Below are positions 17,718-28,457 of a DNA stretch of 64,000 nucleotides, piece by piece. The first letter of the stretch is position 1. Every line of letters begins with the position of its first letter. Location: NCBI RefSeq assembly GCF_964204865.1, contig NC_135256.1, positions 2,852,001-2,916,000 of the forward strand, written 5' to 3'. Origin of the DNA: Styela clava (Eukaryota). A model generated the notes under the pieces. The model was not told where the DNA came from. It did no database searches and saw only the letters and a program-made list of their open reading frames with translations. Position numbers and translations under genes: made by a program.

Positions 17718-20700
17718 GTAAGTATTATACATATTATTTATTGCTAAAATGAAGAAGCCAATAAGCCTGAAATGAAACATTTCAGAATAATTAAAATGGG
17801 AAATGTTTGTTTTACATCTATGTCTAAATAATTTTAATAGTTCATAATTTGATGTGTTAAATTCTCAATTTTATAAAGTTTTGCTGTGGGTTTTTTTCAA
17901 TTTTATCGGTATAATAAGCAATTGAAATGCCACAGAAGCTTGAATTAAATGTTTCAGAATAATAATTAAAATAAGAAATGGCTATTTTGTATAGAAGTAC
18001 GAACTGTATAACAGTTCGAATATTTTAGTCGATTAGAATTTAAATATATCCATAAGTTGAATGTTTGATTTAAGAAAAGTTCCATTTAAAAAATTATTAT
18101 TTTTTAGACAGGCATAGTTACCGACTAATGTTTCTCACTAAATTTATATGGCTATACACTTGTCAAACATATTAATAAAGTGTCGGAATGAAAGGCCACA
18201 TAAATAAATAAACAATATCTGTTGAAACTTATAGTGTCATATTTTAATGACCCCTCATTGTCAAATTTTGATGCTACTGTTGTCAAATTTTCTTAATGCT
18301 GTTATTACTTCTTTGGACTGTTACAAAATTAGCCAAGTCAGTATTGTAGTAAACAAATAGCACGCCGAGCCCTCAGGTTTCTCTCACTTTCTATATTTGA
18401 AAATATGATTTTATACAGCATTTGGTTGACTTGAATATTCTGTTTTGGCTGTCAATCCTTGTGCGTTGTCCAATAAATTTTTCCATATTAAAATTATATT
18501 TCTCAGGCTCATAGGAGGAACCCTATACCCAGCATATGAATCTTACAAAGCTGTCAAGAGCGCAAATGTCAGACAATATGTAAGTAGATGACTATAAATA
18601 ACGAATAGGACATCTTTGCTAGTCAACCTTTAGATCAGTAATTCCCAAAACACGGCCTGCGGGTTGTTATAGGCGATTTAATATGGCCCGCCGGACTTGA
18701 AAGAAATAGTTTAACCCCTATGTTTTAACTTGCCCGGAACTGGTGGTATATTTACTGGTGCCGGCTGAATCGTTTCCTTCTCCCAGTCCATGAATATCCT
18801 TCCGCTTTCAATTTTTCCTCACGTACACGGTCAATCAACTTCAGTAACCACTGCTTTAGTATTTAGTTTAAAGCAGAGGTCGGCAACCTACGGCCGGATC
18901 CGGCCCGATGAGTAATATAATTCGGCCCGTGACGCTTCACTGAATTATAGTAATAAAACAGCCCTTTGGCGATTATATTCTTTAGACTAAATTATATTAT
19001 AACCTGACAAGTATATAATTCACAATTACTCGTTTAATAAGCCTATAATTTAATTATAATTAGAAAAATGGAAACAAAACGCAGAAAAGTTGATGATAAC
19101 TGCAAAGGGTTCAATGGCGCTGAAAATATATTCAAATTGAATTTTTTGAGATACAAGAACAAAATAAATCTATATTCTATTCGAGAGATGTTTCACTGCT
19201 TGATTTTAAATATAAAAAGTATCATTTGTTCGGTTTTCAAAAATAGGTGCGACCCGCCAATGACTTGCAACCCCTAATGTTGGCCCATGAGCGAGGAAAG
19301 GTTGCCGACCCCTGGTTTAGAGATTTGTAAAATCTATCCTTAATTTGAGAGACTGTTCTGATATTTGGAATTTGCTTCTTCTGAGCTGTTTGCGTTTCAT
19401 TTTTTTTTTCTTCACATATTTTGTTAAGCAGCATCTTGTGGTGCGCGTTGTTATTTGCTATTATCATAGTTATTTGTTCATCAGAGATTGCTTACAATTT
19501 TACTAATGTACGTGAGTTTTAAACAATTCATGGGCCGGTGTTTTCCAAACTTTTGTTATCATGACCTTCTTGGCACGATCAAATTTCTTTGCAACCTCCA
19601 GGACCTAAAATAAAAATTGAGGTGAAATTTAATATTACAGAGAATATTGAAAATATATAGTAATAAAATCCACAATACCTTATTATACGAGAATGATGTT
19701 GTAAGAAGATGCTTGCATATTGCATATGGTAGTGGGTCTCTGTACTGATTCCAAATCTTTCAAATTTAATCGATATTTTGTTTTAACATAATTTGGTGTC
19801 GAAAAATATTTTTTCACAATCCCCATTGAGACCTTTCGTACCTCACGGGCCGGCGGAACCCTCAGTCTGAAGAGCCCTGCCATAGAACTTAACTTCTTTT
19901 GTCAAATAACCATAGAATAGAAATTTCACAAAACCTCCTTTTTTCAGGTCCGCTGGATGATGTACTGGGTTATATTTGCACTTTTTATCACAGTCGAAAC
20001 GTTCACAGATATTCTGTTATCCTGGCTTCCTTTTTATTATGAAATCAAAGTTGGATTCCTTATCTGGCTTCTATCACCGTATACTAAAGGTGCAGCATTT
20101 TTATATAGAAAGTAAGTATTCTTATCTGTTGAATTTTATATTTTCATCTTATCAAATTGAATTTTTACTGATATGCATTTATTGGACTCCCGTAGTATAT
20201 GTACTGGGACAAATACAAATTAGGGTTAGGCCATAATTCTATCCTGATTTTCCTTAAGCTTTCCGTTTGAACTGAGAATATTTTAGTTTTCTTCAGAGTT
20301 TGGGGACTGTCTGTGTTAGCCAAGGGAAAATACCCTCTGCCCATAGTAAGTAAAGTAGGCGAACAAAATTAGTTACCTCCGTATTGGTAGTTGGTACTTC
20401 TGGAGTGCCGATTTATTTACCAGCGTTTACCAAGCTATGGGTCGTGAACCAAAACTGGGTCGCTTGTTTTTTCAACAAAAGCGCGAAAGTTATTGGGTTT
20501 ATTTCAGGATAAATTTTATTGTTTATTATATTTTCAGTCTTGAAGTGTTGCTTAATAGTAATTGTTATATGGGAAGTATCACAGCGTAAAATCTTGGAAG
20601 CATTCATTTTGGGACCTCCTGAAATATGCGCACCAAGATGACGCACAACCTGAACTCAGGTTGTGTACCAGGTTAGGGTTCAGGTTGTGCGACATCTTGG

Positions 20701-23700
20701 TGCGCATACTTCAGGAGTACCCTATTTTGAATACGCTATACATAATTGCCCAAAATTTTCAAAAACTCGCTGATTGCAAACAAGCAGACTTTTTTCACTA
20801 CGACAACTTTAAATTATTTCCTGTTGAAATAAAAATGACTGTTTTATATTAGTCATTTAATTTTGCTGCCATAAAAGTACTATTCTATCCAATTAAAAGA
20901 GTCCAGCTGCACACTAACACAAATGTATTTCTGTAACGTTTCATCCGACCAGAGTCAGACTTCCTCAGACAAGCAGTTTACAACAAGCGGTTGTTGTAAA
21001 CTATTCGCGTTCAGACTAAACACTATTTCCAACAAGCTGTTGTTGTAAACTGCTTGTCTGAGGAAGTCTGACTCTGGTCGGACGAAACATTACAGAAATA
21101 CATTTGTGTTAGTGTGCAGCTGGACTCTTTAATTGGATAGAATAGTCATGTTTATTCCAGCTACAGCATCCTTGCAGTATACGCATACGGATCCACTAGC
21201 ATAAAGGCATAGAGAAAAGATAGGAAGTTAGTCTCGCGCAACCTAACTCAAATTTATAAAAGTACTACGTGCCGTTTCGTGTGTGGGTATAAGAAGGTTG
21301 CAAACTGTCACTCTAATGAAATCCCAATGGATAGAAAATATTATAAGGCACCACCTAAAATCAAAATTAAAATATGACCAGCATTGAAGTCCAGACCATG
21401 GAATGTCCATTTCTATATAATGTGATATAAGCTATGGTGATATAATTAGGTGATGCATAATAACGTGAGGCTTATAATATTGAACAACACAGATTAAATT
21501 AAGCTGCATAATACTTCAGAAAAGACTAATTGATTCTATATATGCTCACTAGTAATCCTAATACGTAACATGCTACGTCTTATGATTTAATTGTCTCGTT
21601 ATTATACAACTAGAAACTATGTGGGAGTAGAATGATGCAATTTGTTCATCAATATAGTGTGTAGGTGATTAAAATTATTGGCTCATAACCATTCCCTATA
21701 TATGGCCTGTATATGGTATTGAATACCTGTACAGTGGGGGTGGGCAAGATTTTAGGACTAGAGGCCAATGCTTTTTCTTATGATACGTTTATTTTGTGCT
21801 GACGAATAAATGATGATTGATTGATTGATAGCCAGTTTTATGTCTAACAACCTGTTTTGCATATTCACAGATTTGTACATCCAACGCTATCACGTAGAGA
21901 GCCTGAAATCGACAGGTTTTTGACGTCAGCGAGAGAGCGAAGTTACGCTACGATGGTTGATGTTGGTACAAGAGGAATCAATGTCGCTGCCAATGCTGTT
22001 GTAACAGCTGCTGTGAAAGTAAGTTGAGATTGAAAAGTTTATTCGGTTTTCATTCTGAATAATAGTTCAGAATTATTCTACCATATTTTCTGAATTTACT
22101 GAAATTCGGTTTTCTGAAGTTTGGAGTACACAATTTTTGGCATTCTAGAAATGTGTGTACCAGGAAGGTAGGAGGTAGCTAATTTTGTTCACCTATTTTA
22201 TGTCAAGTTGTGTAAAGGGACTGAAACCTATTGGCAGGGGGTATATTCACTTGGCTTACACAGACAGTTCCCAAACTCATAATAGAACTAAAATGAGGAA
22301 AATTGGAATAAAATAATGTCTTAATCCTAACAGTACACACACTACGGTCTACGGCAGTACCCAATTTCCTCCAACCTTTCTCTAATCCAAATTTGAAGCC
22401 ATTAAAGCTGACTGAGAGTTTGGATTTTGCTGTAAATTTTTCTTCATTCCTATAATCATACATAAAACCGTTATATATATTTTGTATTGAAATCCACATT
22501 TTACTTTTCTCAGGGCCAAGCCGTCGTCTCAGACAGACTAAAAAGTTTTAGTGTCAATGACCTTTCAAGATTATCAGATGAAACGCCAATTCATTCAATG
22601 AATCCTACTAACTACAATCCACCTATGCAAAGGGAACATTTACACAGGTCTCCGTTAGATCCTCAAAGATTTGAAAGAAGCTCTCAACACCCGCAATCTC
22701 AAAGTGCAATGCAAACAGAAATTCAATACAGACATTCTGCTGAGCAGGGTAGGTATATGCAAGAATGTGTACTCCTGTAGTGTGTGTACTAGGTTAGGGT
22801 TAGGCCATAAGTTTATTCCGATTTTCCTTATTTTAGTTCCATTATAAGTTCGGGGACTGTCTGTGTTAGCCAAGTGACCCCCCTGCCCATAGGTTTCGGT
22901 CCCATTACACAACTTGATTGAAAATTAGGCGTACAAAATTAGTTACCTTCATATTGGTACACATACTTCTGGAGCGCCCAGGAATGTCCAAAAGCGAATA
23001 TCTCACTATTTCGAATACATTCTCAAATGGGATCATGTTCTTGTGAGAAATCATAAAGCCTCATCTTCAAGATCTCGTCTAAAACTGCACAAATCTAAAA
23101 TGTCATTGTTTTCTGAGTTGTTTCTTACCAGTTGAGATATCGTACGCTTTGATATCTTGTCTGACAGCTCAAATTCACTAATTTCTGTTAGATGAAAATG
23201 TTCTAAATTATTCTTAAATTCAAAATTTTACTTTGTGGAATATATTGAAGTTTGAATGTTTTCTATAATCTGCAATTCGTTTTCCACATCTCTGAGTATA
23301 GAGGGTAAAGTATTTCATGATTCATTTTGTGTGGGAGGAAATCTGAAGGCTTCATCGTATGGCCACAATGGATGTTTCCCCGACCCTTGACCTCAGAAGA
23401 TTCTTCCTATACTTCACTATGCAAAATTTTGTATGCTTATTTTAAAACTATTTTGGAGAGTTGGTGCTTATAAACTGGTGTACATGTTCAAAATCATTAT
23501 TCAAGTTTTTAAGCGCATGCCACTTGTAGGTACTGACAGCTAATTTTAGCCCAGTCCCGCAGCATTTGCGGGACAAATTTTGGGGCTCCCGAAGTATGCG
23601 AACCAAGATGGCGGACATCGGAACGTAACATGGGTAACAGGTTAGGGTTAGACGATAATTTTTTTCCAATTTTCCGTATTTTAGTCCTATTATCAGTTCG

Positions 23701-26700
23701 AAGACTAGCCAAGAGCCTCTCGTAGTATTTATACCTAAAATTATGGCCTAGCCCTAACCTAGTACACATATTACATTCCGATGTCCGCCATCTTGGTTCG
23801 CATACTTCGGGAGCCCCCAAATTTTAGATTATTGAAACTCAACTAAAGCAATCCGAGCAACATAAGGACAATTAAATTCCTTGATTCACAACTACTTTTT
23901 GAAAACTTAACTAAAAACTGGCAAATAATACGCAAAACAACAGAAAACATGTCAATGTCTACAACCATGCTTGATTTGTTACATCATTATTGACTTATTG
24001 CTGATCGACCATTGTTACGGAAGTAAACAAGAAAATGCTTGAGGAAACATCCATCACTTTTTCTTGTCAAGTTCATGGTCAATGTCAAGTATGGAAATTT
24101 CATAATATATAACTAAGAAAGCCGCGAGTAACATCCGCTGTGTGCACTCCAGGACAGCCAGCTGGATTTTAATGAAATAAGATTTTTATTGGTCCCAGAA
24201 GAGAGAATATAAAACAGTTTTATCATATTCTAGGGAATTGCGACTCCCAGCTTCGGGGCCCGCCAAGGGGGCCACAGAGCTGTCGAAGTGGGGCCACAAG
24301 CTCACAATGCTAGTCGCGGAACTGATTTCATCTTTTCCTTGACAAGAAAAATCTCCGTTCCTACTAGTTTCATTGCTTGATAAGGTTATTTCACAGAGTG
24401 TTTTCACATTGTTGAGCATAAATTGTTTGAGCATAATGGGCTTTGGAATCTATCAATCAAAATAACACTATAAATACCACTGGGATGTTAAACAGGGAGC
24501 CATAAGTGCCTCAAGAAGTAGGCCACGAGCCCTAAAAGGTTGGAACCACTTTTCAGGACAATACTATGAACCATCCCATGATGGTGAAAAGTCCAGCAAT
24601 ACTTTGAATTCATATATAATTATCCCTCACATTTCATCATAAAGGAATAATTCAATCCACACTAGTAAATTTGAAATTATTTTCGAATTTTTTTTTTCAA
24701 CTTCAGCCTCAGCCATGAATAATGAGCCATATCAGATGATTCATGCACCCACAGCACCATCTAGTGGCCTTTATCCTTCTGCTCCGTCCAGTGACGGGTA
24801 CATGGTGACGGCATCAGGTGACCATGGAGGCCATATTGGTGGCCAATTCAAGGCATACTCAATGATGAATCTCTCTCAAGCAAGAGGGGATCAAGGACAC
24901 AGTAAGTAATTTGTATTGTTCTGTTAGGATAGGATTTACATATTTATCTTGGGAATAGGAAAGACGATAAGGCAGCTTAATCATATGGCGATTCGTCCAG
25001 TTACCAGTCCATGACGGGTATGGGATTAGGTAATTATTAGTTATTAAGCATGGACTTGATGGTGGAGGTGTAACCGAACTGCAGAACCACCCTACGGGCC
25101 AGCAATCTTCTTGCACACCACTATCTTGGTCTATCGGCGGTGTGACGCATCGTGCTAAGCGTTAGGAGTACGCTCGCCACCGCACCTCTGATTACCCTTC
25201 ACGGGTTCGCAGGTTCGAATCCCATGCGGGGATGATCATGTGCGAGAGGATTGCTGGACTTCTCGCCGCCGTAGGGTGGTTCACGTGACAGCTGGTCGGT
25301 TACGGCTTCCTCCACCATCAAGTCCATGCTTTCGAAAACAAAATAAATGGCTAAATAATCCCATACCCGACTTGGAATGGTAACCGGTCGAGAGGCCGTG
25401 GTTCGCCATATGATTAAGCCGTCTTATCGACTTTCCTCTCCCCCAGGATAAATATGTAGATCCTATCCTATCTCCGCGTGGGATTCGAACCCACAGAGGG
25501 TAATCTCGAGGTTCGATGGCAAGCATATTCCTAATACTTAGCATGATATGCCAAATCGCCAAGCCTGCTCTACCTAATAATATATCTGAAACTGCTTAGT
25601 CAGGGTTGACATTCATGTAGATGAATTGGTAGAAAAATCTGATCATGAGAAAGTTTGCTAAAGCAGTAACATGCATGAGCTCATGAGTAAAAAGACTTCT
25701 CTGAGCAGAGTTTTGAGTGACCACTGGAGTCACAAGAGCTACTAAACTGTCGGTAATTAAAAGTTGTGGTTGTGCACCTGTAAATATGCATGATGTGATA
25801 TTTATACATTTTATAGCTGTTCAAGCTAATTCAGTAAACAGTCATAAGATATAATCCTAAGTATGCTTGCTCTCAGCACTTTTTGGAAGTACCAGAATTT
25901 CCCTGTGCGGATGTGCTACCAAGTTTATCACACCATGGGTGAGGTGGTGGCAGTGTTCCCTCTAAGGTGTGCGCGTGCACACAGCTTTCAGAGGCTGCGC
26001 ACACGCATAGATTTACTGCGCACAGACGTATTTCGATGTAATGTAACAATGTTCTTTTTCCACCCTTTATTTGAATTAAAATAAAACCATCTGCTACAAT
26101 CAATTTCATTTATTATTTTCCATGTATGTTCATTGTTATCTACTGATAACATATAGCCTTCACTAAAGCATTTACAATCTATAGAAAAACTTATTGAATA
26201 ACCAAAATTTTCTTAATAAGCCCACTTATTATCCGGTTAGAACGTCAAAATTTCTTCATTGGTTTTTGCACAAATATTAGTCATTTCCAAAAAAGTGCGC
26301 ACACACTGAAATTTCTGCGCACACATACTACAATAATTAGAGGGAACATTGGGTGGTTGGCATCAAATTTGAAATTTGGTCATGGAATTTGAATCCAAGA
26401 ATTTAGACTTGCAATCAGCAGTTGAGTCATATTGAATTAAACTGAGAAGTAATTTAATAATTCTTCCTTCACAGCTTTAATGACCCGAACAATAGAATTC
26501 ACATCAGCACCACCAGAAACTTCTGTGGACGACTCGATGCTTCCCGACCATCATGAATACAATGTATCAGGCGATGACAGACCTTACGATACATTGCCGA
26601 GGCAGAGAAGGAAAAAGAGCAGTAAAAAAGTGAGTAAAGCTCAGTTATCAGTAGAGTTTCCACGAGACTAAATTCCGATTTATTCTCAATGCCTTTACAT

Positions 26701-28457
26701 TAATGAAACCGTATGCTTATAATGCAAGGATGCTGTAGCAGGAATAAACATGACTATACTATGCAATTCAAGAGTCGTGCTGCACACTAACAAAAATATA
26801 TTTCTGTAACGTTTCTGACCAAAATCAGACATTGTTGTAAACTGCTTGTCTGAGGAAGTCTGATCTTGGTCAGACGAAACGTTACAAAAATACATTTGTG
26901 TTAGTGTGCAGCAGGACTCTAGAATTTTGAATTGCATAGAAAGTTCAGTTAATTTAAATAGCATGTTCCTAACTCTTGCTCCATTCCCTCTGCCTTTGTG
27001 TTAGTTAATCTGTACCTCAAACCATGCAAGTATTATGGTGCATTATGACATAGGTTCTCAAAGTGCTTCATACAGAGCCCAAAATTTCTGTGAGAGAAAC
27101 CTAGGGGCTCTGGGAGTTATTCATTTATTTGTTAAAATACTGACTTGGCTAATTTCGTAACTTTCCAAAGAAGAATAAACGACATAAATAAAATTTGACA
27201 ACGAGACGGTATTTCAAATATGACATCTATTTCAGGGGTTCCCAAATCATGGGTCGCGACCCCAAATTGAGTCGGAGTGATAAGTAGGTAGGGTCGCAAA
27301 CACGTCATGGGGTCGCTGAGGTATGGTAGAGGATAGATGTACAAAACATCTAAGATTCGACAAACCATGTTAAATTTAGCAGTTTGTACCATGGCTTACT
27401 GTAAAACAGGCCCATAAACATCGCTCTATGCTTATGCTATAGAAAATGTAGGTGCTTATTGTGACATCACTGTTTGGTTTTAGCTTATTTTAGTTAATAC
27501 CACCACATGACCAAACTCAAAAGTCCAGTGAAAGTAGCTCTATATCTCTGATCTATATCTATATGTTCCAATATACGGGCCAAATTTCAATTACAGACTT
27601 ATTGCGACAGTATGAATTTTTTTGAATACAAAGCAGTATATACACACGAGTCACTAAATAAATTAATTTCAATTTAGGAACATTAATTAGTAACTAACGA
27701 TGTGCTGTTTTTTCTGTATAATAAGACAATGTATTACATCACAATGTAAACTTCAACTATTTAATTTTTTGTGCCCGCTTGCTCCAGCTTGGACTATGGA
27801 AAAGAAGAAAGGTTTCACTATTATTACTTTTTATGCTTTTTGATTTTCATTGTTTAAATAACATTCAAATCACTTTTCATCCAAAATAAATTTGTTAAAG
27901 TTGTAAAATTGAAATAATGCATGATACTCTTCCCAAACCATTGACCAATTATGGACCGCATAACAATTTTCGCCGAATTTAGGTGACATAGTTTCACACT
28001 TCATGTTTTTACCTTTTTTTGTTCTAAATATCGCCAATTGTGGCACCCGTAGTGTGTGTACCAGGTTAGGCCATAACTTTATTCCGATTTCTTTTATTTT
28101 AGTTCTATTACGAATTTGAGGACTGTCGCTGTAAGCCAAGTGAATATACCCCCTGCTCATAGGCTTCAGTCCCTTTACACAACTTGATGTAAAGTAGGCG
28201 AACAAAATTATTTACCTCCGTATTGATACACACACTTCTGAAGCGCCGAACTCTTAATGCAAATGATTGTAAAAGGGTCTCGCAATTGGACCAGTGGACT
28301 GTGTAGTGACTTATTCAATTTCAAACATATCTCAATGCTTATCTAACCAATCCCTCTCATCCAGGACAAAGAATCAACATCAGTTCGAAGATCAAAGCGA
28401 CATTCAAAAGCACAATCATATCATGAAGGAAGTTTAGATGAGAGGGATAGAGAATGA
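17686..28457 (+). CDS. REEP: Receptor expression-enhancing protein, REEP1-4 subfamily (TB2/DP1/HVA22); 8 coding exons, 364 aa
   Basis: Exons 17686-17717, 18507-18579, 19948-20111, 21871-22018, 22514-22748, 24707-24901, 26475-26629 and 28365-28457. All introns are GT-AG with compatible phases, and the total is 1095 nt. Translation includes [28 protein letters not shown]...[13 protein letters not shown]...WLPFYYEIK...LSPYTKGA...FVHPTL...[17 protein letters not shown]. Confidence 0.9.
18507..18579 (+). CDS. REEP: REEP coding exon 2
   Basis: tctcag| [24 protein letters not shown] |gtaagt. Confidence 0.92.
18636..18853. mobile_element. hAT MITE in REEP intron 2
   Basis: CAGT...CACTG ends; TSD CTTTAGAT/CTTTAGTA (6/8). 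Confidence 0.6.
18874..19314 (+). mobile_element. Internally deleted hAT (Charlie/SPIN/Buster-like) element
   Basis: CAGAGGTCGGCAACCT...AGGTTGCCGACCCCTG TIRs, TSD GTTTAAAG/GTTTAGAG. It retains [16 protein letters not shown], resembling the transposase N-terminus. A second copy is inverted at about 39122-39450. Confidence 0.75.
19948..20111 (+). CDS. REEP: REEP coding exon 3
   Basis: tttcag| [13 protein letters not shown]...[10 protein letters not shown](K) |gtaagt. Confidence 0.93.
20184..20409 (+). mobile_element. Merlin-like MITE (TTAGGG-bearing family)
   Basis: GG...CC termini, TSD CATTTATT/GATTTATT, internal TTAGGGTTAGG. Confidence 0.75.
20612..20721. mobile_element. Short palindromic Merlin-like MITE
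   Basis: Near-complete hairpin with CAAGATG and GGTTAGGGTT motifs. Similar copies at 40343-40452 and 63581-63690. Confidence 0.7.
20931..20972 (-). ncRNA. Minimal type I hammerhead ribozyme motif (antisense arm)
   Basis: The reverse strand reads TTGT CTGAGGA A GTCTGAC-TCTG-GTCGGAT GAAA CGTT ACAG. Confidence 0.7.
21054..21095 (+). ncRNA. Minimal type I hammerhead ribozyme motif (stem III variant)
   Basis: TTGT CTGAGGA A GTCTGAC-TCTG-GTCGGAC GAAA CATT ACAG: core, 7-bp stem II and stem I TTGT/ACAG. The stem-III palindrome is broken by G>A. Confidence 0.7.
21871..22018 (+). CDS. REEP: REEP coding exon 4
   Basis: tcacag| [14 protein letters not shown]...AAVK |gtaagt. Confidence 0.92.
22139..22361 (-). 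mobile_element. Merlin-like MITE (TTAGGG family)
   Basis: Inverted family copy; TSD CAATTTTT/CAATTTCC. Confidence 0.65.
22514..22748 (+). CDS. REEP: REEP coding exon 5
   Basis: tctcag| [17 protein letters not shown]...AEQ |gtaggt. It contains the RSFS-like motif of REEP1-4. Confidence 0.85.
22768..22978 (+). mobile_element. Merlin-like MITE (TTAGGG family)
   Basis: TSD CAAGAATG/CAGGAATG; GGTTAGGGTTAGG. Confidence 0.7.
23582..23817. mobile_element. Merlin-like MITE (CAAGATGGCGG + TTAGGG subfamily)
   Basis: TIRs GGGGCTCCCGAAGTATGCGAACCAAGATGGCGGACATCGGAA; perfect 8-bp TSD CAAATTTT. Confidence 0.85.
24707..24901 (+). CDS. REEP: REEP coding exon 6
   Basis: cttcag|...|gtaagt, phase 1 at both ends, open frame. 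An alternative in-frame acceptor lies 6 nt downstream. Confidence 0.75.
24925..25560 (-). mobile_element. tRNA-derived SINE (host copy, split by a nested SINE)
   Basis: 3' part at 24925-25120 and 5' tRNA-like head at 25474-25560 (B box GGTTCGAATCCC on the minus strand). Confidence 0.75.
25136..25470 (+). mobile_element. tRNA-derived SINE (full length)
   Basis: A-box-like head, B box GGTTCGAATCCC, body with CTTCCTCCACCA and an (ATCCT)n tail. Multiple copies occur in the window. Confidence 0.85.
25951..26351. mobile_element. hAT MITE
   Basis: CAGTGTTCCCTCT...AGAGGGAACATTG; TSD GGTGGTGG/GGTGGTTG. Confidence 0.75.
26475..26629 (+). CDS. REEP: REEP coding exon 7
   Basis: tcacag|...RRKKSSKK|gtgagt; phases compatible. 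Confidence 0.75.
26648..26939. mobile_element. Second Penelope-like hammerhead fold-back element (opposite orientation)
   Basis: Homologous to 20883-21255 including the tail; inverted arms; flanking repeat AAAGCTCAGTTA/AAAGTTCAGTTA (11/12). Confidence 0.7.
26846..26887 (+). ncRNA. Minimal type I hammerhead ribozyme motif (intact)
   Basis: TTGT CTGAGGA A GTCTGAT-CTTG-GTCAGAC GAAA CGTT ACAA: intact core, 7-bp stem II, palindromic ACGT stem III, GUU triplet and stem I TTGT/ACAA. Confidence 0.75.
28042..28247 (+). mobile_element. Merlin-like MITE (TTAGGG family)
   Basis: High similarity to the other copies; TSD degraded. Confidence 0.65.
28365..28457 (+). CDS. REEP: REEP terminal coding exon
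   Basis: atccag| [15 protein letters not shown]...RDRE* in phase 0. Confidence 0.7.
   Translation, partial: DKESTSVRRSKRHSKAQSYHEGSLDERDRE

What the first reader, a model, noticed from the sequence alone, without database searches (positions are those of the whole stretch)
20871..21267. Short fold-back mobile element carrying two oppositely oriented hammerhead ribozymes (Penelope-like, non-coding)
Seen: a 370-bp insert in REEP intron 3 with a 12-bp TSD (ATAAAAGTACTA), inverted arms of about 105 bp and a unique tail. Each arm has a complete hammerhead core: CUGAGGA, one extra A, a 7-bp stem II, then GAAA. Stem III is a loop-less palindrome (AACGUU, intact in the minus arm), the cleavage triplet is GUU, and stem I is bulged (UUGU/ACAG plus UGUA/UACA). 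Established: minimal type I hammerheads with palindromic stem III occur in pseudo-LTRs of Penelope-like elements and act as dimers, and PLE insertions often have inverted pLTRs. Inference: this is a non-autonomous, ribozyme-bearing retroelement family (retrozyme-like) mobilised by a PLE, possibly unannotated in this lineage.
Basis: partly seen in the sequence, partly recalled or inferred. Interest (0 to 1): 0.85.

Follow-up and report, generated by a model that had tools for sequence, protein, structure and literature searches.

The report
Truncated Penelope-like retroelement insertion with hammerheads
The 373-bp insert is a real but ordinary by-product of a Penelope-like retrotransposon: the element's terminal repeat joined head-to-head to a shorter inverted copy of itself, each arm carrying the minimal hammerhead ribozyme motif already described for these elements.

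Summary
A 373-bp insert (20883-21255) sits between perfect 12-bp duplications. It has about 105-nt inverted arms, a 109-nt one-sided tail and a minimal type-I hammerhead motif in each arm.

The right arm plus tail is 97-98% identical to the pseudo-LTR of an autonomous Penelope-like element (PLE) found elsewhere in this 377-Mb genome. That element has a 3.7-kb unit and a 938-aa ORF with RT, a CX4CxxC linker and GIY-YIG.

In 21 independent head-to-head insertions, one outer end always lies at unit position ~100-116 and the other at ~211-229. Target duplications are 10-15 bp, mostly 12. Every centre junction is different.

So the fold-back is made afresh at each integration, by two cDNAs primed from the two nicked DNA strands at two RT start sites. 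It is not copied from a fold-back master, and I found no self-propagating retrozyme-like family.

The hammerhead matches the published PLE "min-HHR" point by point, although Rfam models do not detect it. Both ribozymes in this copy carry a CpG transition at a functionally important position, so the copy is decaying.

First readers noted similar cassettes elsewhere in this genome. This is a new member of a known kind and of modest interest.

The parts
20871..20882 (.). Left copy of the 12-bp target-site duplication. Its last 4 nt (ACTA) are also complementary to the RNA just beyond the arm (microhomology at the junction).
20883..20986 (-). Inverted partial pseudo-LTR copy (unit positions ~104 to 1), without the tail. 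Its outer end lies at the upstream ('no-tail') RT start site.
   Evidence: 20879-20986 matches u107-1 at 97%
20931..20972 (-). Minus-arm minimal hammerhead, from stem I 5' strand to stem I 3' strand. Core CUGAGGA at 20968-20962; predicted cleavage between 20935 and 20934. Helix III palindrome is intact, but C to U at 20943 makes pair 10.1-11.1 a G.U.
20987..21039 (.). Centre junction, unique to this copy. A 10-12-bp mini-hairpin sits at the inner end of each arm, with 23 nt of filler of unknown origin between them.
   Evidence: (D1, I3)
21040..21146 (+). Right arm: pseudo-LTR unit positions 1-107, in the sense orientation of the PLE.
21054..21095 (+). Plus-arm minimal hammerhead. Core CUGAGGA at 21058-21064; predicted cleavage between 21091 and 21092. 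G to A at 21089 breaks the helix III palindrome.
21147..21255 (+). PLE 'tail' (unit positions 108-216), present at one end only. It ends at the downstream RT start site. In full-length copies the ORF start codon follows 34 nt later.
21256..21267 (.). Right copy of the 12-bp target-site duplication.

Best explanation
The insert is the minimal product of one integration event of an autonomous, endonuclease-bearing Penelope-like element. The element is Neptune/Nematis-type, judged by its CX4CxxC linker.

**Proposed mechanism**
1. The element's GIY-YIG endonuclease nicks both DNA strands about 12 bp apart, at a loosely palindromic site (CAAC-N12-RTTG).
2. Each 3'-OH primes reverse transcription of PLE RNA at an internal start site. 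One strand starts at unit position ~217 and yields the arm plus tail. The other starts at ~103 and yields the arm without the tail.
3. Both cDNAs run to the 5' end of a unit-length transcript, at unit position ~1 (window 21040).
4. The two cDNAs are joined head-to-head with filler.

This gives TSD - inverted arm - unique centre - arm - tail - TSD.

**Ribozymes**
- Each arm carries the PLE minimal hammerhead only because that motif lies at unit positions 15-56 of the pseudo-LTR.
- In the parent element the hammerhead block is under constraint. It presumably trims read-through or multimeric PLE RNA as a dimer or with protein help.
- In this copy it is a passenger. It lacks ORF and partner, and both ribozymes have already taken CpG-transition hits.

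**Shown:** homology to the PLE, the architecture, the TSDs, the start-site asymmetry and the unique centres.

**Inferred:** the nick geometry, double priming, a transcript 5' end at unit position 1, and any ribozyme activity.
For: **Link to an autonomous PLE**
- Window 21040-21255 matches the flanking repeats of 3713-bp units at 97-98%.
- These units carry a 938-aa ORF with RVT_1, GIY-YIG, YIDD and CNRKACTTC. The ORF resembles animal PLE protein clusters.

**Census of 70 loci**
- 21 independent head-to-head insertions have TSDs of 10-15 bp (mode 12).
- In all 21, one outer end lies at u96-116 and the other at u211-229.
- Simple insertions also end at either u~100-105 or u~215-218.

**Junctions**
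- Inner ends are often unequal, for example u119 against u1, or 3'UTR against u104. This rules out simple snap-back copying.
- 14 independent centres are all different.

**Target site**
- AAC precedes the TSD in 10 of 22 sites (P about 2e-12). RTTG follows it.

**Hammerhead**
- The motif has helix II of 7 bp, helix I of 4 bp, an unpaired nucleotide between 9 and 10.1, G10.1-C11.1 and a palindromic 15.2/16.2. This matches the min-HHR of Cervera and de la Pena 2014 (PMC4209133).
- That paper also reports dual min-HHRs 100-700 bp apart on opposite strands, read as truncated PLEs.
- Between two PLE subfamilies, u1-80 is 94% identical, against 49-76% for adjacent segments.

**Published mechanism**
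- Frangieh et al. 2024 (PMC11167929): a purified PLE protein nicks and extends both strands. It starts RT at two internal sites, and the tail lies between them. It does not need hammerhead cleavage.
- Craig et al. 2021 (PMC8557442): an inverted 5'-truncated copy is typical, and the tail often sits at one end only.
Against: - The transcript 5' end at u1, the two RT start sites and ribozyme cleavage in vivo are therefore inferred from DNA copies only.
- In vitro, Frangieh et al. saw no difference in start site between the two strands. Here the asymmetry is strict.
- The tail is ~113 bp here, against the 30-40 bp usually described.
- For this particular copy both arms end at the same template position, each with a mini-hairpin. 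A snap-back contribution at its centre cannot be excluded.
- Helix covariation is only one-sided and not significant against shuffles.
- No Rfam hammerhead model matches.
Confidence: 0.85

Rival explanations
1. One reading: a distinct non-autonomous, retrozyme-like fold-back family that carries two ribozymes, is transcribed as a unit and is mobilised in trans by the PLE.
For: - About a dozen loci match the whole 373-bp query end to end at 83-91%.
- The outer ends of the arms are nearly fixed.
- A recent preprint argues that animal non-LTR retrozymes derive from PLE pLTRs (10.64898/2026.07.22.740005).
Against: - Every independent copy has its own centre junction, and inner arm ends are often unequal.
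- Copies that share a centre also share flanks, so they are segmental duplicates: L005 and L007-L009, L048/L049, L086/L087.
- The arms are 97-98% identical to the pLTR of full-length copies and do not form a diverged lineage.
- The copies are not tandem.
- The copies lack the sequence downstream of the tail. In the one PLE studied in vitro, that region holds the protein-binding part of the template.
- The two ribozymes lie on opposite strands. A read-through transcript folds into a -202 kcal/mol hairpin.
Confidence: 0.07
2. A single cDNA snap-back: one target-primed cDNA reaches the RNA 5' end, folds back on itself and copies itself to make the inverted arm. The second DNA strand does not prime.
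For: - In the window copy both arms end at the same template position.
- Each inner end carries a 10-12-bp mini-hairpin (D1, I3).
- Several other centres are near-perfect palindromes.
Against: - Snap-back predicts symmetric inner ends, and no reason to stop at u~103.
- Many insertions have unequal inner ends (L048, L065, L081, L084).
- The short arm's outer end coincides with the 3' end used by simple no-tail insertions (L051, L052, L061, L068).
- A PLE protein extends both strands in vitro.
Confidence: 0.07
3. A fold-back DNA transposon or MITE with terminal inverted repeats, in which the hammerhead-like strings are fortuitous.
For: It has inverted repeats flanked by a direct duplication.
Against: - The arms are homologous to the repeat of an RT+GIY-YIG element.
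- The structure is asymmetric, with a tail at one end.
- TSD length varies from 10 to 15 bp.
- The descriptor gave 0 hits in 200 simulated windows.
Confidence: 0.01

Closest known systems
Minimal hammerhead ribozymes (min-HHR) of metazoan Penelope-like elements (Cervera and de la Pena 2014, PMC4209133; small dimeric variants, Lunse et al. 2017, the latter from my own knowledge)
   Same: - CUGANGA...GAAA core, with an unpaired nucleotide between A9 and 10.1.
- G10.1-C11.1 pair, long helix II (7 bp) and short helix I (4 bp).
- No helix III hairpin, but a palindromic 15.2/16.2.
- Sense orientation inside the pLTR.
- Hundreds of dispersed copies, few of them in full-length elements.
- Pairs on opposite strands 100-700 bp apart.
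   Different: - This sequence family is specific to this genome; no paper in the library holds its core strings.
- The two ribozymes of the window copy each carry a disabling-looking CpG transition.
- Activity is untested.
[quoted passage not shown] 2021, PMC8557442) and the in-vitro mechanism of the Anolis Poseidon element (Frangieh et al. 2024, PMC11167929)
   Same: - pLTRs formed by partial tandems.
- An inverted 5'-truncated copy next to the upstream pLTR.
- A tail at one end only.
- Variable TSDs and AT-rich targets with an xTT motif at the nick.
- Both strands extended, two internal RT start sites, and uncleaved RNA used as template.
   Different: - The tail is ~113 bp rather than 30-40 bp.
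- Both start sites lie upstream of the ORF, not 111-118 nt inside it.
- Start-site use is strictly asymmetric between the two ends (21 of 21). In vitro no strand difference was seen.
- The target looks palindromic (CAAC-N12-RTTG).
Animal non-LTR retrozymes (Cervera and de la Pena 2020, PMC7229834; Li et al. 2026 preprint)
   Same: Short, non-coding, hammerhead-bearing and derived from PLE pLTR sequence.
   Different: - Retrozymes are head-to-tail tandem units that give unit-length circular RNAs.
- The window element is a single head-to-head pair with ribozymes on opposite strands.
- Only one locus of this family (C3:14331569-14332661; 360-bp unit, 3 copies) has the retrozyme layout.
L1 twin priming (5' inversions of LINE-1 insertions; from my own knowledge)
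   Same: The second nicked strand also primes cDNA synthesis, which gives an inverted 5' segment joined to the 3' segment by microhomology.
   Different: - In L1 the two segments are different parts of one RNA.
- Here the two arms copy the same region, from two defined internal start sites, so two templates or two passes are needed.

Membership tests
PLE minimal hammerhead (min-HHR, Cervera and de la Pena 2014) | Catalytic boxes CUGANGA and GAAA, and a cleavable UH site | tested here: met
   Both arms and all family copies aligned. The boxes are invariant between two subfamilies.
PLE minimal hammerhead (min-HHR, Cervera and de la Pena 2014) | [quoted passage not shown] | tested here: met
   The extra A is present in all copies. 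G-C is present in the family and in the plus arm; the minus arm has G.U after a CpG transition at 20943.
PLE minimal hammerhead (min-HHR, Cervera and de la Pena 2014) | Long helix II (6-8 bp), short helix I (4-5 bp), no helix III hairpin, palindromic 15.2/16.2 | tested here: met
   Helix II is 7 bp, and helix I is 4 bp with a distal 4 bp. 100% of 120 cells are paired. The ACGU palindrome is present in the family and the minus arm; the plus arm has ACAU.
PLE minimal hammerhead (min-HHR, Cervera and de la Pena 2014) | Lies in the sense strand of the pLTR of an RT+GIY-YIG element | tested here: met
PLE minimal hammerhead (min-HHR, Cervera and de la Pena 2014) | Helices supported by compensatory changes | tested here: inconclusive
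   There are 7 one-sided changes that keep pairing and no double changes. 385 of 500 shuffles reach the observed score.
PLE minimal hammerhead (min-HHR, Cervera and de la Pena 2014) | Mg-dependent self-cleavage, as a dimer or with protein | not testable with these tools
   Needs a bench assay. The monomer hammerhead fold is not the minimum-energy fold.
Rfam hammerhead families (RF00163 and relatives) | Covariance-model score at or above the gathering threshold | tested here: not met
   No hammerhead match even at E up to 10, on the window arms or on an intact full-length pLTR. The genome-wide RF00163 search found nothing, but its control rang nowhere, so it is uninformative. This is expected for a motif without a closed helix III.
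EN+ Penelope-like element insertion | Source element encodes RT plus a C-terminal GIY-YIG endonuclease | tested here: met
   The 938-aa ORF has RVT_1 at 2.3e-10 and GIY-YIG at 4.8e-05, both above the Pfam cut-offs. The CX4CxxC linker indicates Neptune/Nematis type. The ORF is not inside the window.
EN+ Penelope-like element insertion | pLTR, adjacent inverted 5'-truncated copy, tail at one end, variable TSD | tested here: met
Animal non-LTR retrozyme | Head-to-tail tandem repeats of a short unit, each with a sense hammerhead | tested here: not met
   The window element is one head-to-head pair. The only tandem array of the family is at another locus.
Animal non-LTR retrozyme | Unit-length circular RNA | not testable with these tools
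Fold-back DNA transposon / MITE | Symmetric terminal inverted repeats, fixed TSD length, link to a transposase | tested here: not met
   One end is asymmetric (tail), TSDs are 10-15 bp, and the link is to an RT+EN element.

The most novel reading that the evidence does not exclude
The strict rule seen here is one end at the upstream RT start site and the other at the downstream one, in 21 of 21 insertions. Together with a palindromic CAAC-N12-RTTG target, unique head-to-head centres and frequent arm ends at the transcript 5' end, this would mean two things.

- PLE integration in vivo would be a concerted double target-primed reaction by an asymmetric, probably dimeric, RNP that assigns a different initiation site to each DNA strand.
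- Hammerhead-bearing fold-back solo pLTRs would be its default product whenever the template is a unit-length mRNA.

This would explain why min-HHRs vastly outnumber full-length PLEs in animal genomes.

A more speculative extension is that the palindromic helix III pairs two PLE RNAs to supply the two templates.
Probability: 0.35. Interest if true: 0.55.

Novelty: new member of a known kind. Interest (0 to 1): 0.3.

Why it matters
For genome annotation, this is a plain PLE fragment in an intron and should be masked as such. It is not a new ribozyme gene or a new element class.

For PLE biology, the family is young and clean, with about 410 hammerhead copies and many intact junctions. It gives in-vivo support for the two-strand, two-start-site mechanism so far seen only in vitro. 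It also offers a simple reason why dispersed and paired min-HHRs far outnumber full-length PLEs.

Two more features are of note. The hammerhead block is the best-conserved non-coding part of the element, and it sits at the inferred 5' end of the transcript. Both points are relevant to the still open question of what PLE hammerheads do.

Tried and rejected
- **Rfam scans.** Scans at E up to 10 on the region, on the arms alone and on an intact full-length pLTR gave only spurious miRNA-type hairpin matches and no hammerhead. The genome-wide RF00163 search found nothing, but its control rang nowhere, so it says nothing.
- **Long gapped patterns.** A shorter pattern within the rule was used instead.
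- It was redone from coordinates only.
- **Literature string search.** A search for the family's core strings found no paper.
- **Templates cleaved by the hammerhead.** Inner arm ends at u46-50 in three loci looked at first like ends at the cleavage site (u52/53). However, those arms include u48-52, so they are not cleavage-product ends.
- **Possible third fragment.** A 12-mer match at window 16233 suggested another PLE fragment. The sequence there shows nothing hammerhead-like.
- **Organism identity.** The organism could not be established. The protein atlas only shows animal PLE-like clusters.
- **Intron number.** The number of the host-gene intron was not verified.

Full report
**What is there**

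A perfect 12-bp direct repeat (20871-20882 and 21256-21267) brackets 373 bp. Inside lie inverted arms, 20896-21000 and 21026-21130, of 105 nt and 94% complementarity. A further perfect 19-nt inverted repeat sits at the outer ends and overlaps the last 4 nt of the left duplication. The stretch 21147-21255 has no inverted partner.

Each arm contains CUGAGGA, one unpaired A, a 7-bp helix II closed by a 4-nt loop, and GAAA. Each also has a short helix I of 4 bp, plus a distal 4 bp across an internal loop.

In the minus arm the helix III position is the loop-less palindrome followed by the GUU site. In the plus arm a G to A change at 21089 breaks that palindrome.

A strict descriptor asks for the core, helix II of at least 5 bp, helix I of 4 bp and paired 15.2/16.2. 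It finds two hits in the window, both in PLE-derived arms. It finds none in 200 simulated windows.

**What it derives from**

A search of the window's own 377-Mb genome with the insert returned many matches. The right arm plus tail (window 21040-21255, here called unit positions u1-u216) is 97-98% identical to a repeat that flanks 3713-bp units.

These units hold a 938-aa ORF that scores above the Pfam cut-offs for RVT_1 and GIY-YIG. The ORF has a YIDD box and a CX4CxxC motif in the RT-EN linker. According to the literature read, that linker motif marks the Neptune and Nematis clades of Penelope-like elements. A feature search in the protein atlas lands on animal RT/GIY-YIG clusters.

In full-length copies the ORF start codon follows 34 nt after u216, and the hammerhead lies in the sense strand at u15-u56. 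The element in the window is therefore the terminal 216 bp of a PLE unit plus an inverted copy of its first ~105 nt.

**Is it a family of its own?**

I classified 70 loci against the unit. Twenty-one independent head-to-head insertions have recognisable target duplications of 10-15 bp, most often 12. In all 21, one outer end lies at u96-116 and the other at u211-229.

Simple, one-armed insertions end at one or other of the same two positions. Inner ends are frequently unequal between the two arms. Roughly half of all inner ends fall at u1 plus or minus a few nucleotides, and the rest continue into the 3'UTR of an upstream unit.

A pattern search for exact head-to-head cores within 30-160 nt found 15 loci. 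These hold 14 independent centres, and all 14 differ. Many show short templated duplications or filler. Copies that share a centre also share flanks, so they are segmental duplicates.

This is what one expects if the fold-back is built anew at each integration. It is not what one expects if a fold-back master were being copied. The window copy's two arms share a private variant (G at u93), which fits a single source.

**Mechanism**

Three papers bear on this.
- Frangieh et al. 2024 showed that a purified PLE protein nicks and extends both strands of the target. It initiates reverse transcription at two internal sites of the RNA, and the PLE tail lies between them. It does not need hammerhead cleavage.
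- Craig et al. 2021 describe the inverted 5'-truncated copy, and a tail often present at one end only, as typical of PLE insertions.
- Cervera and de la Pena 2014 already reported dual min-HHRs 100-700 bp apart on opposite strands and took them for truncated PLEs.

The data here fit these accounts and add detail.
- The two ends of an insertion use different start sites without exception in my sample.
- The tail is ~113 bp.
- Oriented with the tail to the right, the target shows CAAC just before the duplication (AAC in 10 of 22 sites, P about 2e-12) and RTTG just after it. This is a loose palindrome, consistent with symmetric nicks 12 bp apart.

I infer that both 3'-OH ends prime on PLE RNA, run to the transcript 5' end near u1, and are joined in the middle. 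Short fold-back products arise when the template is a unit-length mRNA. Full-length copies need initiation at the downstream repeat of a longer-than-unit transcript.

The inferred steps are the nick geometry, the position of the transcript 5' end, and the use of two templates.

**The ribozyme**

The motif matches the published min-HHR feature by feature. These features are the unpaired nucleotide between 9 and 10.1, G10.1-C11.1, the long helix II, the short helix I, and the palindromic 15.2/16.2 without loop 3.

Rfam hammerhead models do not detect it, even on an intact full-length repeat. This is expected for a motif without a closed helix III.

A second, diverged PLE subfamily allows a comparison:

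| Segment | Identity between subfamilies |
|---|---|
| u1-80 | 94% |
| 3'UTR end | 49% |
| u81-105 | 68% |
| Tail | 76% |
| 5'UTR | 73% |
| ORF start | 61% |

The block that holds the hammerhead is therefore the best-conserved non-coding part, and its core boxes are invariant. All helix changes keep pairing, but they are one-sided, and the shuffle control is not significant. Covariation therefore neither proves nor disproves the fold.

The hammerhead fold is not the minimum-energy fold of the monomer. A transcript across the whole window insert forms a -202 kcal/mol hairpin that buries it. The two ribozymes of the insert lie on opposite strands, so they cannot form the dimer within one RNA. 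No inner arm ends coincide with the cleavage site, so the templates were uncleaved, as in vitro. Cleavage itself could not be tested.

**Context and copy number**

The family's 38-nt hammerhead occurs 410 times in the genome at up to 3 mismatches, about 94 of them perfect; the reversed control gives 0. Only about six loci keep the repeat-ORF junction at 96% identity or more.

A TB2/DP1/HVA22 (REEP-type) exon lies at 19945-20118 on the + strand. An intronic position is therefore plausible, though I did not verify the intron number.

The window holds a second insertion of the same kind at about 26669-26920, in the opposite orientation. It follows the same rule.

First-reader notes record similar cassettes elsewhere in this genome. 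I used the one in this window as a comparator and did not test the others.

**Limits**

The organism is unknown to me, so I cannot say whether the family is annotated in its lineage. 

**Verdict**

The finding is real, well explained and of a known kind. It is a minimal PLE insertion product carrying two decaying copies of the PLE minimal hammerhead.

Noticed in passing
window 26669-26920 (TSD about 26636-26647 and 26936-26947): A second PLE-derived head-to-head insertion, in the opposite orientation. The tail side is on the left (u191-27) and the no-tail arm on the right (u1-89). Its 12-bp TSD has one mismatch. The plus-arm hammerhead is intact and carries structure-preserving changes in helix II and helix I. 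It follows the same tail / no-tail rule. This is the subject of another first-reader note.
   Followed up: partly
L034 2070-3162 (G000:C3:14331569-14332661): A tandem array of 3.03 units of 360 bp, 100% identical to each other. Each unit is an internal-deletion derivative of the PLE (u1-322 joined to u3671-3713). The array starts at u90 and ends at u102, the no-tail RT start site. No other copy of this deletion junction exists in the genome. The layout is retrozyme-like and hints at rolling-circle or repeated template-jump reverse transcription in a single event.
   Followed up: partly
22 oriented insertion sites, e.g. L002, L003, L004, L025, L053, L079: The target-site preference is a loose palindrome: CAAC immediately before the duplication and RTTG immediately after it (AAC in 10 of 22 sites, P about 2e-12). 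The window's own site is a weak match, with only C at position -1.
   Followed up: yes
L090, L093-L097 (e.g. G000:C10:17636707-17661713, C14:16120388, C13:2024974): A diverged PLE subfamily carries a 7-nt duplication inside the hammerhead 5' box, which separates C3 from the rest of the core. Sister copies L091 and L092 lack it. Several carriers are spaced about 8.3 kb apart on C10 and may be segmental duplicates. The ribozyme is probably dead in these copies.
   Followed up: partly
window 20622-20711: A roughly 90-nt near-perfect hairpin lies just upstream of the insert. It scores as spurious plant-miRNA-type matches in Rfam (MIR8562, 47.7 bits against a gathering score of 211). It is probably another inverted-repeat element.
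   Followed up: no
L003 versus L005, L007-L009 (C6:1852183 and four sites on C19): Head-to-head PLE insertions sit at the same position of a repeated host sequence with near-identical TSDs, but the centre differs between L003 and the C19 copies. Either the same target in a repeat was hit twice, or the palindromic centre was remodelled after duplication.
   Followed up: no
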